Assembly (NCBI RefSeq): GCF_031769215.1
Contig: NW_026782609.1
Span: 186,001 to 250,000, forward strand
Direction: 5' to 3'
Length of the DNA stretch: 64,000 nt
Source of the DNA: Ylistrum balloti
Lineage: Eukaryota
Below are positions 57,651 to 64,000 of this stretch, one piece after another (positions within the stretch are counted from its first letter, which is position 1; each line of letters begins with the position of its first letter). The notes beneath the pieces were generated by a model. It was not told the origin of the DNA. It did no database searches and saw only the letters and a program-made list of their open reading frames with translations. A program made the translations under genes and the position numbers.

Positions 57651-58740
57651 TAACCTTAGTGTGTTCAGTTGTACCAAGTGTGTTCAGTTATTACTTTAGT
57701 GTGTGTTACAGATGTGTTCAGTTATTACCTTAGTGTAAGTTTACCTTAGTGTGTTCACTGGTAGACATGTGTGTTACAGTAGTGTGTTCAGTTATTACCT
57801 TAGCGTGTTCAGTTATTACTTTAGTGTGTTGTATGTGTTCAAGTGTGTTATTATTACTTTAGTGTGTTCAGTTAGTGTGTTCAGTTATTATGTGTTCAGT
57901 TATTACTTTAGTGTGTTCAGTTATTACCTATGTGTCCTATGTGTTCAGTTATAACCTTAGTGTGTTCAGTTATTACCTTAGTGTGTTCAGTTATTACTTT
58001 AGTGTGTTCAGTTATAACCTTAGTGTGTTCAGTTATTACCTTAGTGTGTTCAGTTATTACCTTAGTGTGTTCAGTTATTACCTATGTGTCAAGTGTGTTC
58101 AATTATTACCTTAGTGTGTTCAGTTATTACCTTAGTGTGTTCAGTTATTACTTTAGTGTGTTCAGTTATTACCTTAGTGTGTTCAGTTATTACCTTAGCG
58201 TGTTCAGTTATTACTTTAGTGTGTTCAGTTATTACCTTAGCGTGTTCAGTTATTACTTTAGTGTGTTCAGTTATAACCTTGGTGTGTTCAGTTATTACCT
58301 TAGTGTGTTCAGTTATTACCTTAGCGTGTTCAGTTATTACTTTAGTGTGTTCAGTTATTACCTTAGCGTGTTCAGTTATTACTTTAGTGTGTTCAGTTAT
58401 AACCTTGGTGTGTTCAGTTATTACCTATGTGTCAAGTGTGTTCAATTATTACCTTAGTGTGTTCAATTATTACCTTAGTGTGTTCAGTTATTACTTTAGT
58501 GTGTTCAGTTATTACCTTAGTGTGTTCAGTTATTACTTTAGTGTGTTCAGTTATAACCTTAGTGTGTTCAGTTATTACCTTAGTGTGTTCAGTTATAACC
58601 TTAGTGTGTTCAGTTATTACCTTAGCGTGTTCAGTTATTACTTTAGTGTGTTCAGTTATAACCTTAGTGTGTTCAGTTATAACCTTAGTGTGTTCAGTTA
58701 TAACCTTAGTGTGTTCAGTTATAACCTTAGTGTGTTCAGT
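57650..58740. repeat. 21-bp minisatellite
   Basis: Unit ttagtgtgttcagttattacc. Confidence 0.96.
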
Positions 58741-60039
58741 TCAACAGATTTTTCTGCTGCTTCAGAGAGGTAGCTATATGTCCTTATCTTGGTCTTTCTA
58801 ACATACAATATCACCATACACTGATATTTTAATTTGATGCCTGGCATCACTCTAAAAGTAAAATTAATTTTGTTTTTTTAATTGATTTAAGTCTGAACTG
58901 AACTAGTTTATTTCCAGTATTACAAAGGATATGTTATATACAGCAATGACAACCTCAAAGTTAATAAGGCCAGTATCACATTCACATGGAAAGGACTGTA
59001 TAATCCAGTATATAGAATCTCGACAGGATGACAATGATTATGTAAACTAAAATAAACTAAATCTCAACATGGAGGGAATGTAACCACTAAATTTAGTGTG
59101 TGATACACTACATCTCAACATGGAGGGAACGTAACCACTAAATTTAGTGTGTAATACACTACATCTCAACATGGAGGGGATCTTAGTGTGTAACTAGTCT
59201 TTAATAATGTATGTTTATGTGTGACATTCTTTCATCATTAAAGAAATTTATGTGCTATTAATGTATATCAGGTAGGATTTACCAGAAGATAGGATACATA
59301 TTATATATATATATATATATAGTGCAAATATGGTTAATTCTCCATGTCCAGAAAACATATGACGTCACTATTGAACGTCATTGTTCATGAAGTCTCAATT
59401 GTATCTATGTACACAATGTAAAACATCTGAAGAAGAAATGAAAGCGCTTATGTTTTACAGCTCATCGAGTTTTCCAGTTTTTCTATTTTTTATATACATA
59501 CCTATATATATATATATATATGTATTGTTTGTCAAATGAAGATTAAAATTCACCAGATTTACATTATCGTTCTTCACTGAATCATTTAAACAAAGTATTA
59601 ATCACCATTTTTTTTTATTTATTGACACAATAAACAGATTATATGAAATAATGGAGATACAATGTAAGATGAACTGGTCACTATACACATTAAACCAGAA
59701 ATTTTAGACATCAGATCTACATTCCAGACACGCTGGTCTCAATACAACAGTACAGGAATGATTTAGGTCCCTCTAGTTTTGTAAGTTGTGGGAGATCATT
59801 ATAGATCAAATAGCACAAACTAAAGAACAAACATATTAAGGGCCCCACAATGTTGTACTTTCTTATTTAACCAACTACTTGTCTTTACATAAAATATACA
59901 CCTTGCTTTGTTGAATGTCCTCGAATTGTGGGTAATCCATACACACAATTGTACTACAACACAATCTGATATAAAGATTAACTACACGCAGTCTAGATTA
60001 CACATTCACCATGTAACCATTTTACAATATACTTGTCTC

Positions 60040-60830
60040 CCATAATACAACTGTCCCCTCCCACAATCCTCTTGTCTCCCACAATACAAATGTCCCCTTC
60101 CACAATCCTCTTGTCGCCCACAATATAACTGTCCCCTCCCACAATCCTCTTGTCTCCCACAATACAACTGTCCCCTCCCACAATCCTCTTGTCTCCCACA
60201 ATACAACTGTCCCCTCCCACAATCCTCTTGTCTCCCACAATACAACTGTCCCCTCCCACAATCCTCTTGTCTCCCACAATACAACTGTCCCCTCCCACAA
60301 TCCTCTTGTCTCCCACAATACAACTGTCCCCTCCCACAATCCTCTTGTCTCCCACAATACAACTGTCCCCTCCCACAATCCTCTTGTCTCCCACAATACA
60401 ACTGTCCCCTCCCACAATCCTCTTGTCTCCCTCAATACAACTGTCCCCTCCTACGATCCTCTTGTCTCCCACAATACAACTGTCCCCTCCCACAATCCTC
60501 TTGTCTCCCACAATATAACTGTCCCCTCCTACGATCCTCTGGTCTCCCACAATACAACTGTCCCCTCCCACAATCCTCGTCTCCTTCTACAGTACTTTGG
60601 TCAACCACAGTCCTCTTGTTGCCTTCTTTAGTACTTTGGTCAACCACAATCCTTGTCTCCTTCTACAGTACTTTGGTCAACCACAATCCTCGTCTCCTTC
60701 TACAGTACTTGGGTCAACCACAATCCTCTTGTTGCCTTCTATAGTACTTGGGTCGTCCACAATCCTCTTGCCACCTTCTACAGTACTTGGGTCATCAACA
60801 ATCTTTCTGTTTCCTCCTACAGTACTTCGG
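60040..60830. repeat. 39-bp tandem repeat and a related ~37-39-bp array downstream of the DPF stop (probable 3' UTR)
   Basis: tcctcttgtctcccacaatacaactgtcccctcccacaa to about 60580, then ccacaatcctcgtctccttctacagtactttggtcaa. Confidence 0.95.
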
Positions 60831-61000
60831 TAAGACACAATCTTCTTATTTCCTTAAATATACATATGTCTAATAAGACATTACAATCCCACAAAACATG
60901 TGTCTACCACAATCCTCTTGTCGCCTTCCTCCACACAGGGTGTGTAACATCAGAACATAATTCTTGTCAGTCTCACCAACAAATATTCCACGACTTCATA

Positions 61001-64000
61001 TCATTGCATCCCTGCTGGTTTCTTCCCACCATGGAATTCTTCAATACACAAATGACAACTCCAATTGCCTGAAAAGAGTAAACCATACACAAATGTAACA
61101 ACACATTTGCCTGAAAAGAGTAAACCATACACAAATGTAACAACACATTGTTGGACAACAAAATGTGGTTCAGTGAGAGATTGGATGAGGTTAATACATG
61201 TAATATTGGAAATACTGGAATCTACTTACACTCTGGAGGTTCAGTGAGAGGTGGATTGAGGCAGTACATGTGGTATTGGGATCTACTCACCCTCTGGGGG
61301 TTCAGTGAGAGGTGGGTTGAGGCAGTACATGTGGTATTGGGATCTACTCACCCTCTGGGGGTTCAGTGAGAGGTGGATTGAGGCAGTACATGTGGTATTG
61401 GGATCTACTTACCCTCTGGAGGTTCAGTGAGAGGTGGATTGAGGCAGTACATGTGGTATTGGGATCTACTTACCTTCTGGGGGTTCAGTGAGAGGTGGGT
61501 TGAGGCAGTACATGTGGTATTGGAAAAACAGGAATCTACTTACCCTCTGGGGGTTAAGTGAGAGGTGGATTGAGGCATTACATGTGGTATTGGGATCTAC
61601 TCACCCTCTGGAGGTTCAGTGAGGGGTGGGTTGAGGCAGTACATGTGGTATTGGGATCTACTTACCCTCTGGGGGTTCAGTGAGAGGTGGGTTGAGGCAG
61701 TACATGTGGTATTGGGATCTACTTACCCTCTGGAGGTTCAGTGAGAGGTGGGTTGAGGCAGTACATGTGGTATTGGGATCTACTTACCCTCTGGGGGTTC
61801 AGTGAGAGGTGGGTTGAGGCAGTACATGTGGTATTGAGGAGTACATGTGGTACTTACTTACCCTCTGGGGGTTCAGTGAGAGGTGGGTTGAGGCAGTACA
61901 TGTGGTGAGATTGGGCAGTACATGTGGTATTGGGATCTTACCCTCTGGGGGTTCAGTGAGAGGTGGGTTGAGGCAGTACATGTGGTATTGGGATCTACTT
62001 ACCCTCTGGGGGTTCAGTGAGAGGTGGGTTGAGGCAGTACATGTGGTATTGGGATCTACTTACCCTCTGGGGGTTCAGTGAGAGGTGGGTTGAGGCAGTA
62101 CATGTGGTATCCCCTGTCACAGTCATCACAAAACAGCAGCTGCTCCTGTCGTGTACAAAACAAATATATTAAAACCAATCCCTTACTAAATGTATAAAAT
62201 GTAAAACGAGAACGTGTGACATTCAACGAATAGGAAAAATACCTGTCAATGAACAATGTAGTGTCAGAAATTCAACTGATATCTGTAATATATGTTAAGG
62301 TTAACATTTACACCTGGTACACAAACCAGTGTATACTTAAATCATTGTCAAAGGTGTCACACAGTCCACAGGATTTACACCTGGTACACAAACCAGTGTA
62401 TACTTATATCATTGTCAAAGGTGTCACACAGTCCACAGGATTTACACCTGGTACACGAACCAGTGTTTACTTACATCATTGTCAAAGGTGTCACACAGTC
62501 CACAGGATTTACACCTGGTACATGAACCAGTGTATTCTTACATCATTGTCAGAGGTGTCACAAAGTCCACAGGATTTACACCTGGTACATGAACCAGTGT
62601 ATTCTTACATCATTGTCAAAGGTGTCACACAGTCCACAGGATTTACACCTGGTACACGAACCAGTGTATTCTTACATCATTGTCAGAGGTGTCACAAAGT
62701 CCACAGGATTTACACCTGGTACACAAACCAGTGTATACTTACATCATTGTCAGAGGTGTCACACAGTCCACAGGATTTACACCTGGTACACAAACCAGTG
62801 TATACTTACATCATTGTCAGAGGTGTCACACAGTCCACAGGATTTACACCTGGTACACAAACCAGTGTATACTTACATCATTGTCAGAGGTGTCACACAG
62901 TCCACAGGATTTACACCTGGTACACAAACCAGTGTATACTTACATCATTGTCAAAGGTGTCACAAAGTCCACAGGATTTACACCTGGTACACGAACCAGT
63001 GTATACTTAAGTCAATGTCAGAGGTGTCACACAGTCCACAGGATTTACACCTGGTACACAAACCAGTGTATACTTAAGTCAATGTCAGAGGTGTCACACA
63101 GTCCACAGGATTTACACCTGGTACACAAACCAGTGTATACTCAAGTCAATGTCAGAGGTGTCACACAGTCCACAGGATTTACACCTGGTACACAAACCAG
63201 TGTATACTTACATCATTGTCAGAGGTGCCACACAGTCCACAGGATTTACACTCAATACACTGCCAAGGATATTTCTTCACAGACACGATCATATTGTTGG
63301 TGAACTGCAGACAAGTTGGATGACCTGACAAAGAAGACATATCAATTTGATTCACTGAGTGATAAGACCTTTATAACAAGAGTTGTTTAAGAACAACGTA
63401 GCACACTTATTGATGACATATTTCATATCAATACAACCCCTTTTGGACCCCATACATATGAAAAACATTGTTCAACATATTGCTAATGATTCATATTAAT
63501 GCTTGAACTATTTAATTATCAGCTGTGTATTGACATCTTTGACCCAGTACTGCTTATATATCTTTAACATTTTAAGTTGGGATGCCCTCATTGCTAGAGT
63601 GACTAAATAAGTCCACCCTATTCCCTAATAAACAGGCTATAAACCATTAAATAAAGGGCCATAACTCTATGTAAAGCAAGGTACAAAGCCTCATTAGTGT
63701 CACACACCAAACAATATTTGATTTAGGTGGGAACAGTGTATAGGCATGTATCCATTGAAAAGCTGCAGTCATAGTCTTAACAGGAATGAACCCAGTGATT
63801 ACGATATATCAAATTTACTTTCTCAGATTTATTTAAAGTGAAGTACCGCCTGTTTAAAGTACTGACTGTTTAATAGGTTAAATGATGACAGTATTTACCT
63901 GATCTTCCACAGTCACTACAGGAAACTAACTCCTCTGGCTGATTACTCTTTTTGTTCTCCAAGGAGTCCCCCAGACAGAAGTCACAATAGTTATTGGCAG
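61001..64000 (-). CDS. DPF2: DPF/d4-family (ubi-d4/requiem, BAF45) double-PHD protein, last four exons; gene continues off the right edge
   Basis: Exons 64000-63899 ([11 protein letters not shown]...[12 protein letters not shown]), 63324-63212 (GHPTCLQF...[18 protein letters not shown]), 62145-62064 ([27 protein letters not shown]) and 61068-61001 ([12 protein letters not shown]...MQ*). The DPF1/2/3 paralog cannot be resolved; probably the single invertebrate d4 gene. Confidence 0.93.
61150..62063 (-). repeat. 61-bp array made of the DPF exon 3' end plus 5' splice site
   Basis: Minus-strand unit TACCACATGTACTGCCTCAACCCACCTCTCACTGAACCCCCAGAGG|gtaagtagatcccaa. Confidence 0.97.
62305..63211 (-). 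repeat. 67-bp array made of the DPF exon 3' end plus 5' splice site
   Basis: Minus-strand unit TGTAAATCCTGTGGACTGTGTGACACCTCTGACAATGAT|gtaagtatacactggtttgtgtaccagg. Confidence 0.97.

What the first reader, a model, noticed from the sequence alone, without database searches (positions are those of the whole stretch)
61150..62063. The next DPF intron independently carries ~13 copies of its own exon end plus donor
A different, 61-bp unit copies the end of the following exon ([16 protein letters not shown]) plus GTAAGT or GTGAGT. Most copies keep a consensus donor, including the one only 61 nt from the real site (62002). Read-through gives GGT AAG TAG at once. Two consecutive introns were each expanded by amplifying their own donor junction, from unrelated units.
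Basis: seen in the sequence. Interest (0 to 1): 0.72.

Follow-up and report, generated by a model that had tools for sequence, protein, structure and literature searches.

The report
Splice-junction minisatellites fill scallop DPF intron
The last intron of a scallop chromatin-reader gene (DPF) consists almost wholly of tandem copies of its own two splice junctions; the structure is real, but it is a repeat type already known from lancelets and the human F7 gene and is most likely a harmless by-product.

Summary
On the minus strand, the last intron of a DPF (double-PHD) gene runs 62063-61069 (995 nt). It opens with a 61-nt minisatellite whose unit is the last 47 nt of the preceding exon plus 14 nt of intron carrying the donor.

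- **Copies:** besides the real junction there are 13 donor-bearing copies (all keep GT; one is a perfect consensus), two fragments and a decayed end copy.
- **Acceptor end:** the intron ends in a 42-nt repeat that duplicates its acceptor. About 98% of the intron is copies of its own two junctions.
- **Not an artefact:** the unit occurs nowhere else in the genome. Contigs from three independent DNA samples hold it as a closed 61-nt cycle at 6-15 times single-copy depth.
- **Relatives:** two other bivalve-like loci have plain 480-560-nt introns here.
- **Splicing:** cDNA-like contigs join a donor of this type to the true acceptor, but cannot show which copy.

This is a "mirage" minisatellite, known from amphioxus and human F7 intron 7, where the most upstream donor is used. 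It is most likely a tolerated by-product of an extreme minisatellite load (47% of 290 kb). The scan has already reported many such arrays elsewhere in this genome, including the neighbouring intron.

The parts
63212..63325 (-). DPF exon B (end of PHD1 and start of PHD2, ...[10 protein letters not shown]); its last ~35 nt seed the neighbouring 67-nt array
   Evidence: Translation. 89-92% identical to exon B of two other bivalve-like loci. A spliced contig in run X6 joins 63212 to 62145 with 118 nt of unique exon B.
62306..63251 (-). 67-nt minisatellite (~14 copies) made of the exon B end plus its donor; sister finding, unit unrelated to the 61-nt unit
   Evidence: Tandem Repeats Finder; sequence.
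62064..62145 (-). DPF exon C (82 nt, [27 protein letters not shown]+G, ends in phase 1), part of PHD finger 2
   Evidence: Pfam PHD at 35.8 bits against a cut-off of 24. Boundaries from the spliced X6 contigs. tblastn to relatives.
62055..62066 (-). Authentic 5' splice site AGG|GTAAGT (GT at 62063-62062); the in-frame TAG follows two codons after the exon end
   Evidence: Sequence; GT..AG joint that skips 995 nt.
61167..62110 (-). 61-nt 'mirage' minisatellite: unit = last 47 nt of exon C plus 14 nt of intron with the donor. Holds c0 (real junction), 13 donor-bearing copies, 2 fragments and 1 decayed copy.
   Evidence: Unique in the genome. Multi-copy in three DNA samples.
61207..61834 (-). Two 314-nt higher-order blocks (61834-61521 and 61520-61207), each four 61-nt units plus one 70-nt variant unit; 12 differences in 314
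   Evidence: Period 314; block comparison; alignment.
61465..61476 (-). Copy c11 donor AAG|GTAAGT (G+1 at 61473), a 9/9 match to MAG|GTRAGT and stronger than the authentic site, 590 nt into the intron
   Evidence: Donor table.
61150..61206 (-). Decayed terminal copy c16 (12 differences, no donor), the array edge left out of homogenisation
61044..61149 (-). 42-nt repeat (2.5 copies) made of the last 16 nt of the intron with the acceptor plus ~26 nt resembling the start of exon D. The extra AG is at 61112-61111; its use would add 42 nt in frame.
   Evidence: Tandem Repeats Finder; sequence; in-frame ORF 61001-61132. DNA contigs of X1, X4 and X5 lack one 42-nt unit.
61001..61068 (-). DPF exon D, last coding exon ([21 protein letters not shown], stop TGA at 61003-61001)
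   Evidence: The acceptor at 61069|61068 is used in the X6 contig.

Best explanation
This is a 'mirage' minisatellite: a local tandem duplication that happened to span the exon C/intron junction and then grew by slippage, unequal exchange and block duplication inside the intron.

It persists because it does not change the mRNA. The splicing machinery pairs the acceptor of the 82-nt exon C with the first donor downstream of it (exon definition, or 5'-to-3' scanning as shown for human F7 intron 7). Any transcript that retains the intron or uses a later donor meets TAG two codons after the exon end, so it is truncated or removed by nonsense-mediated decay.

The same process acted on the acceptor end (the 42-nt repeat) and on the preceding intron (the 67-nt array). 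The genome makes minisatellites at an extreme rate. Once introns are short, a 40-70-nt duplication often includes a junction.

Shown: the structure, its uniqueness, its presence in independent DNA samples, its absence from two other bivalve-like loci, and the higher-order growth. Inferred: neutrality, the choice of the first donor, and the role of decay.
For: - **Structure:** 61-nt unit = 47 nt of exon plus 14 nt of intron. c0 is the real junction, and c1, c6 and c8 are identical to it.
- **Growth pattern typical of minisatellites:** a 5-unit (314-nt) block duplication and a decayed edge copy.
- **Local origin:** the unit is absent elsewhere in the genome.
- **Real DNA:** closed 91-nt cycle contig at 6.1x, 5.7x and 15.4x flanking depth in X1, X4 and X5, against 6.3 expected from the assembly. 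A contig also crosses from exon D into the last copies.
- **Lineage-specific:** Tegillarca granosa (L019) and an unidentified mollusc-like contig (L017/L018) have the same exon boundaries. Their repeat-free introns are 365-425 nt (B-C) and 479-562 nt (C-D).
- **Extreme background:** tandem repeats cover 47% of 290 kb of this contig and 58% of the DPF gene. 87 of 91 array units are unrelated to each other, so they were born locally.
- **No special targeting needed within the gene:** 5 of its 8 arrays are intron-internal.
- **No sign of selection on the extra donors:** 0 changes in 26 GT positions where about 0.6 are expected at the array's ~2.4% divergence.
- **Splicing:** X6 contigs join the first donor of the 67-nt array to exon C unambiguously. 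They also join a donor of the exon-C type to the true acceptor of exon D.
- **Unspliced level:** the depth of the intronic 'link' pieces in both arrays fits one unspliced level of about 0.7.
- **Precedent:** amphioxus mirages do not disturb splicing (PMC3087553, PMC3902484). In F7 the most upstream of identical donors is used (PMC1557585).
Against: - The cDNA-like contig across the C-D junction has only 30 nt on the exon C side, and that 30-mer occurs at seven donors. Use of the first donor is therefore inferred, not seen.
- Contigs cannot show rare isoforms.
- Four copies score better than the authentic donor and one is a perfect consensus. In F7 only such perfect pseudo-sites competed with the first site, so some mis-splicing is possible.
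- Array units on this contig carry strong donor-like motifs 2.3 times more often than matched non-repeat segments (15 against 6.4 +/- 2.2). This leaves room for a bias towards junctions.
- Variable sites in the exon-derived part sit mostly at third codon positions (5 of 7, P = 0.049). This is not what free drift of intronic copies predicts.
Confidence: 0.75

Rival explanations
1. The array is functional: a battery of U1 snRNP binding sites. It would tune DPF output, for example by diverting a share of transcripts to later donors followed by the immediate stop and decay. Alternatively it would hold unspliced RNA in the nucleus or protect the transcript from premature cleavage.
For: All 13 copies keep GT, and 11 score at least as well as the real donor. 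Every wrong choice gives the same stop two codons on. The neighbouring intron is built the same way. Copy number may differ between individuals (6x against 15x).
Against: Retention of GT is what drift predicts at this low divergence (0.6 changes expected, 0 seen). In the sister 67-nt array, five of its ~14 copies have lost GT. Two other bivalve-like loci manage without any array. No contig of a mis-spliced form was seen. In amphioxus and F7 the copies are silent.
Confidence: 0.1
2. A mutational process aimed at splice junctions seeds these arrays. Candidates are damage or template switching at U1-bound or R-loop-prone 5' splice sites, or a sequence motif shared by junctions. Under this view the arrays are not randomly placed duplications filtered by selection.
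For: Donor-like motifs are enriched 2.3-fold in array units on this contig. The word AGGTA occurs in 22 of 91 units against 8.2 expected. Two neighbouring introns plus one acceptor in a single gene are affected. Earlier notes of the scan report many such arrays in this genome (unverified).
Against: Most arrays (about 85%) carry no strong donor. Five of the eight arrays in this gene are intron-internal. Earlier notes report that donors and acceptors are both affected. With short introns and 40-70-nt units, my rough estimate is that 10-15% of random duplications span a donor; 2 of 8 then has a binomial P of about 0.3. Controls drawn from non-repeat DNA include intergenic sequence, so part of the enrichment may only reflect arrays lying in genes.
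Confidence: 0.12
3. Assembly artefact: the real intron is short and the array was created by mis-assembly of reads.
For: Tandem repeats are a known source of assembly error. Short-read contigs cannot span the array.
Against: The unit closes on itself in three independent DNA samples at 6-15 times single-copy depth, matching the 6.3 expected from the assembly in two of them. A contig links exon D, the unique 17 nt and the last array copies with 0-1 differences. Variant copies and a higher-order structure are not what a collapse or expansion error gives.
Confidence: 0.02

Closest known systems
Amphioxus 'mirages' (Adh3, troponin C, globins BflGb6/BflGb9, PGBD5)
   Same: Minisatellite-like tandem duplications whose unit spans an exon-intron boundary and repeats the splice signal. 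Both 5' and 3' boundaries can be affected, normal mRNA is still made, and they show length variation and concerted evolution with diverged edge copies (PMC3087553 section 16, PMC3902484).
   Different: A mollusc, not a cephalochordate. Here donor-derived and acceptor-derived repeats together make up about 98% of one intron, and the neighbouring intron has its own array. No RT-PCR-grade proof of normal splicing was available here.
Human F7 intron 7 37-bp VNTR
   Same: The first repeat unit spans the exon-intron boundary, so the real donor is followed by five to nine identical pseudo-donors that stay silent. It gives an experimentally supported rule: the most upstream site wins by 5'-to-3' scanning (PMC1557585).
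   Different: The unit is 61 nt with 13 pseudo-donors, one of them a perfect consensus. Every later donor gives an immediate stop here, whereas in F7 some pseudo-sites keep the frame. Nothing has been tested in scallop cells.
Intron gain by tandem duplication across an AGGT site (Rogers model; discussed for amphioxus globins)
   Same: It rests on the same raw material: tandem duplication that copies splice signals.
   Different: No new intron is created here. The intron position is shared with two other bivalve-like loci, so the duplication only enlarged an old intron.
Ordinary intronic minisatellites (VNTRs)
   Same: Unit length, head-to-tail arrangement, higher-order blocks, a decayed edge and probable copy-number variation.
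   Different: The array starts inside a coding exon and every unit carries a strong 5' splice site.

Membership tests
Mirage minisatellite (exon-intron boundary tandem repeat) | Head-to-tail array of a minisatellite-sized unit (10-160 nt in the published cases) | tested here: met
   61-nt unit with about 15 units at 92% matches; aligned copies.
Mirage minisatellite (exon-intron boundary tandem repeat) | The unit spans an exon-intron boundary, the first (or last) unit is the authentic junction, and the copies repeat the splice signal | tested here: met
   c0 = last 47 nt of exon C plus the donor. 13 copies carry GTRAG. Exon boundaries come from spliced contigs and relatives.
Mirage minisatellite (exon-intron boundary tandem repeat) | Regular mRNA is still made and the copied sites stay silent | tested here: inconclusive
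   The X6 contig joins a donor of this type to the true acceptor, but its 30-nt anchor fits seven donors. The B-C junction of the sister array is unambiguous. Contigs cannot exclude minor isoforms.
Mirage minisatellite (exon-intron boundary tandem repeat) | Length instability or polymorphism | tested here: inconclusive
   Cycle depth is 6.1x and 5.7x in X1 and X4 but 15.4x in X5. One 42-nt acceptor unit is missing in the DNA contigs. Contig depth is only a rough measure, and a repeat collapse cannot be excluded.
Mirage minisatellite (exon-intron boundary tandem repeat) | Concerted evolution inside the array with a diverged boundary copy | tested here: met
   Internal copies differ by 0-6 positions, while the terminal copy differs by 12.
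DPF / d4 (BAF45) double PHD finger proteins | C-terminal tandem PHD fingers | tested here: met
   Exon C matches Pfam PHD at 35.8 bits against a cut-off of 24. Exons A-D are 87-96% identical to DPF fragments of other animals, which their sources name ubi-d4 or DPF3.
DPF / d4 (BAF45) double PHD finger proteins | N-terminal DPF1-3_N (requiem) domain | tested here: inconclusive
   An upstream exon (L015:1254-1385, minus strand) hits PF14051 at 22.4 bits, below the 27.6 cut-off, because only the end of the domain lies in that exon. The matching gene piece in the ark clam carries PF14051. The joined multi-exon protein was not searched, by rule.
Intron gain by tandem duplication (Rogers model) | The duplication creates an intron at a position where relatives have none | tested here: not met
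   L017 and L019 have introns at the same two positions.
Regulated unproductive splicing through alternative 5' splice sites | Transcripts that use the alternative sites exist and vary with conditions | tested here: inconclusive
   No such joint appears among the contigs shown. No raw RNA reads were on offer.

The most novel reading that the evidence does not exclude
Scallop genomes, like amphioxus, may have a minisatellite-forming process with a real preference for splice junctions, for instance linked to co-transcriptional events at U1-bound donors. Some of the resulting donor arrays, including this one with a perfect-consensus copy 590 nt into the intron, would then be used to divert a share of transcripts into decay and so set gene dosage. 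The 2.3-fold excess of donor motifs in array units and the third-codon-position bias of the variants are not explained by pure drift, and neither excludes this reading.
Probability: 0.1. Interest if true: 0.65.

Novelty: new member of a known kind. Interest (0 to 1): 0.3.

Why it matters
For annotation, such arrays are traps. Each copy looks like an exon end with a perfect donor, so gene predictors and short-read aligners can misplace junctions.

For biology, the locus is a natural version of the classic duplicated-splice-site experiment: 14 near-identical donors and 2 acceptors compete within 1 kb of an essential, single-copy chromatin gene. It could be used to test, in an invertebrate, whether the 'most upstream donor wins' rule found for human F7 holds, and how much decay hides. 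It also adds a mollusc to a phenomenon so far named only in lancelets.

On present evidence it is a tolerated by-product, not a device. The scan has already met it many times in this genome.

Tried and rejected
- **RNA runs:** The look-up of sequencing runs listed no run on record as RNA. One small run (X6, labelled 'DNA?') turned out to hold spliced contigs.
- **Coverage hole:** exon C and the unique part of intron B-C have no contigs from X1, X4 or X5. The tool warns that conserved, human-like pieces are filtered, so I read nothing into the hole.
- **Related scallops:** The age of the array within scallops therefore stays open.
- **Costly search:** the large representative search was not used. 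The identity of the protein was not in doubt.
- **Joined protein:** the joined multi-exon protein was not built or searched, by rule. Exons were searched one by one by reference.
- **PDB search:** a search with the 27-aa exon gave nothing, because the query is too short.
- **Selection on GT:** the test is underpowered (0 changes seen, 0.6 expected).
- **Transposon or dispersed satellite:** rejected, because the unit is unique in the genome and 87 of 91 array units on the contig are unrelated.
- **Shared core motif:** a search among arrays gave enriched words (ACACT, GTGTAC, CTGAAC, AGGTA) but no clear common core. From memory, nine bases of the unit (plus strand, AGAGGTGGG) resemble the start of Jeffreys' 33.15 minisatellite core. 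This was not tested and may be chance.

Full report
**What is there.** The gene lies on the minus strand. Four coding exons of a DPF-type (double PHD finger) protein are in the window:
- Exon A: 64000-63908.
- Exon B: 63325-63212.
- Exon C: 62145-62064 (82 nt, ending in phase 1 after ...LTEPPE plus one G).
- Exon D: 61068-61001, the last coding exon, with its stop at 61003-61001.

Exon C matches Pfam PHD above the cut-off. Exons A-D are 87-96% identical in protein to DPF fragments of other animals. Upstream exons on the same contig match the DPF1-3_N and C2H2 parts of an ark-clam DPF gene. The gene is single-copy in the 648.5-Mb assembly. Earlier notes of this scan name the animal as the saucer scallop Ylistrum balloti; I could not verify that.

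**The array.** Tandem Repeats Finder reports a 61-nt array at 61167-62110. On the gene strand the first unit (62110-62050) is the real junction: the last 47 nt of exon C, then GTAAGT and eight more intron bases. After it come 13 copies that each keep a GTRAG donor, two short donor-less fragments and one decayed terminal copy.
- Three copies are identical to the real junction over all 61 nt. The others differ at 1-6 positions and the terminal one at 12.
- Units 6-10 and 11-15 form two 314-nt blocks that differ at 12 positions. Each ends in a 70-nt variant unit, so the array also grew by block duplication.
- By a rough donor matrix, 11 of the 13 copies score at least as well as the true site.
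- The copy at 61473 reads AAG|GTAAGT, a full match to the consensus.

**The other end of the intron.** A 42-nt repeat at 61044-61149 (2.5 copies) consists of the last 16 nt of the intron with the acceptor plus about 26 nt resembling the start of exon D. It supplies a second acceptor 42 nt upstream of the real one. Its use would add 14 codons in frame. The 995-nt intron is therefore 897 nt of donor-derived array, 17 nt of unique sequence and 81 nt of acceptor-derived repeat. The preceding intron (63211-62146) holds the unrelated 67-nt array made from the end of exon B and its donor, plus 160 nt of unique sequence.

**Is it real DNA?** The unit occurs nowhere else in the genome. Three DNA runs from two studies and two organism labels were laid on the region. 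Their contigs are at least 99% identical to the window, so the two labels may be one species.
- Each run holds a 91-nt contig. This is the length of a closed cycle of a 61-nt unit at word size 31.
- Its depth is 118, 111 and 174, against 19.4, 19.6 and 11.3 for flanking single-copy contigs.
- The assembled array predicts a mean word multiplicity of 6.3. The observed ratios are 6.1, 5.7 and 15.4.
- A further contig runs from exon D through the unique 17 nt into the last copies.

So the array is not an assembly artefact. The third sample may carry more copies. These contigs also lack one 42-nt acceptor unit, which is either an allele or a collapse.

**Splicing evidence and its limit.** No run on record as RNA was offered. 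Run X6, with 16 million letters of contigs, holds two GT..AG joints exactly at the predicted exon borders, so it derives from RNA.
- The B-C joint has 118 nt of exon B on one side. It proves that the first donor of the 67-nt array is used.
- The C-D joint uses the true, proximal acceptor. However, it has only 30 nt on the exon C side, and that 30-mer is found at seven donors. It cannot show which copy was spliced.
- The intronic 'link' piece of the 61-nt array has depth 4.4 at multiplicity 5.5.
- A piece of the 67-nt array that lacks GT has depth 3.0 at multiplicity 4.7.
- Both give an unspliced level near 0.7, against 5-7 for the spliced pieces.

The link depth therefore needs no use of later donors, although contigs cannot exclude it.

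**Relatives.** The ark clam Tegillarca granosa (L019) and an unidentified mollusc-like contig (L017/L018) have the same exon boundaries. Their introns are repeat-free, at 365-425 nt (B-C) and 479-562 nt (C-D). The arrays thus arose on the scallop side. Closer relatives could not be reached.

**Background.** I assembled 290 kb of the same contig from fetched pieces.
- Tandem repeats cover 47% of it and 58% of the DPF gene.
- 87 of 91 array units are unrelated to each other, so arrays are born locally and often, about one per 3 kb.
- In the DPF gene, five arrays are intron-internal and only the two donor arrays and the small acceptor repeat span junctions.
- With short ancestral introns and units of 40-70 nt, a rough estimate is that 10-15% of random duplications span a donor. 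Two of eight is then unremarkable (my estimate, binomial P about 0.3).
- Against that, units on this contig carry a strong donor-like motif in 15 of 90 cases, against 6.4 +/- 2.2 in matched non-repeat segments (0 of 300 resamplings reach 15). The word AGGTA is enriched. Some bias towards junctions, or simply towards genes, remains possible.

**Known kind.** Tandem repeats that span exon-intron boundaries were named 'mirages' in amphioxus (Adh3, troponin C, globins, PGBD5). They affect 5' and 3' boundaries, vary in length, evolve in concert and do not disturb splicing (PMC3087553, PMC3902484). The human F7 gene has a 37-bp VNTR whose first unit spans the exon 7-intron 7 boundary. Fifty constructs showed that the pseudo-donors are functional but the most upstream site is always chosen, and only perfect-consensus pseudo-sites compete (PMC1557585). 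I found no paper describing this in scallops.

**Verdict.** It is a new member of a known repeat type and most likely a tolerated by-product of an exceptional minisatellite load. The first donor is chosen by position and errors are removed by the immediate stop. Open points:
- The actual use of the copies, above all the perfect-consensus one.
- The array's age.
- Whether junctions are favoured as seeds.

The scan has already reported many such arrays in this genome.

Noticed in passing
window 62116-62220: In the RNA-like run X6, a 105-nt contig runs unspliced from intron B-C into exon C at depth 6.7. That is as deep as the spliced pieces and about ten times the unspliced level inferred elsewhere. 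It may reflect an alternative start, a retained intron end or noise.
   Followed up: no
G000:C752:1-290000 (window = 186001-250000): Tandem repeats of period 10 or more cover 47% of this 290-kb stretch (30% of the window, 58% of the DPF gene). 87 of 91 arrays have units unrelated to each other, which implies a very high rate of local minisatellite birth.
   Followed up: partly
window 61207-62110: Variable sites in the exon-derived 47 nt of the copies sit mostly at third codon positions (5 of 7, P = 0.049). Two variants (AAT for AAC, GAA for GAG) match the state of the real exon in both outgroup loci. The distal copies may preserve older synonymous states of the exon, or the exon may exchange sequence with the array.
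   Followed up: partly
window 57780-58741 and 60032-60855: Downstream of the DPF stop codon lie further arrays. A 21-nt unit of about 45 copies reads AGGTAATA... on the gene strand (donor-like), and 39-nt units of 14 and 7.5 copies start about 150 nt after the stop. Whether they lie in the 3' UTR is unknown.
   Followed up: no
window 60996-60998: All three DNA samples (X1, X4, X5) differ from the window just after the stop codon by a 3-nt insertion (TTA) and an A>G change. The RNA-like run X6 agrees with the window.
   Followed up: no
L019:2844-5892 (Tegillarca granosa) and L014:1903-3588: The ark clam's DPF gene has a 31-nt array of about 98 copies in the intron before exon A. The scallop has unrelated 36-nt and 37-nt arrays in the same intron. 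Large intronic minisatellites are thus not confined to the scallop.
   Followed up: no
L015:1-821 (G000:C752:260001-260821): A 34-nt array of 24 copies starts about 50 nt after the donor of an upstream DPF exon. Each unit carries CAGTATGT, but it is not copied from the exon end, so a donor-like motif in an array does not prove a junction origin.
   Followed up: yes
array units on C752:1-290000: Words enriched in array units over non-repeat DNA: ACACT (30 against 11), GTGTAC (10 against 1.8), CTGAAC (11 against 1.9) and AGGTA (22 against 8.2). A-runs are depleted. No single shared core was found.
   Followed up: partly
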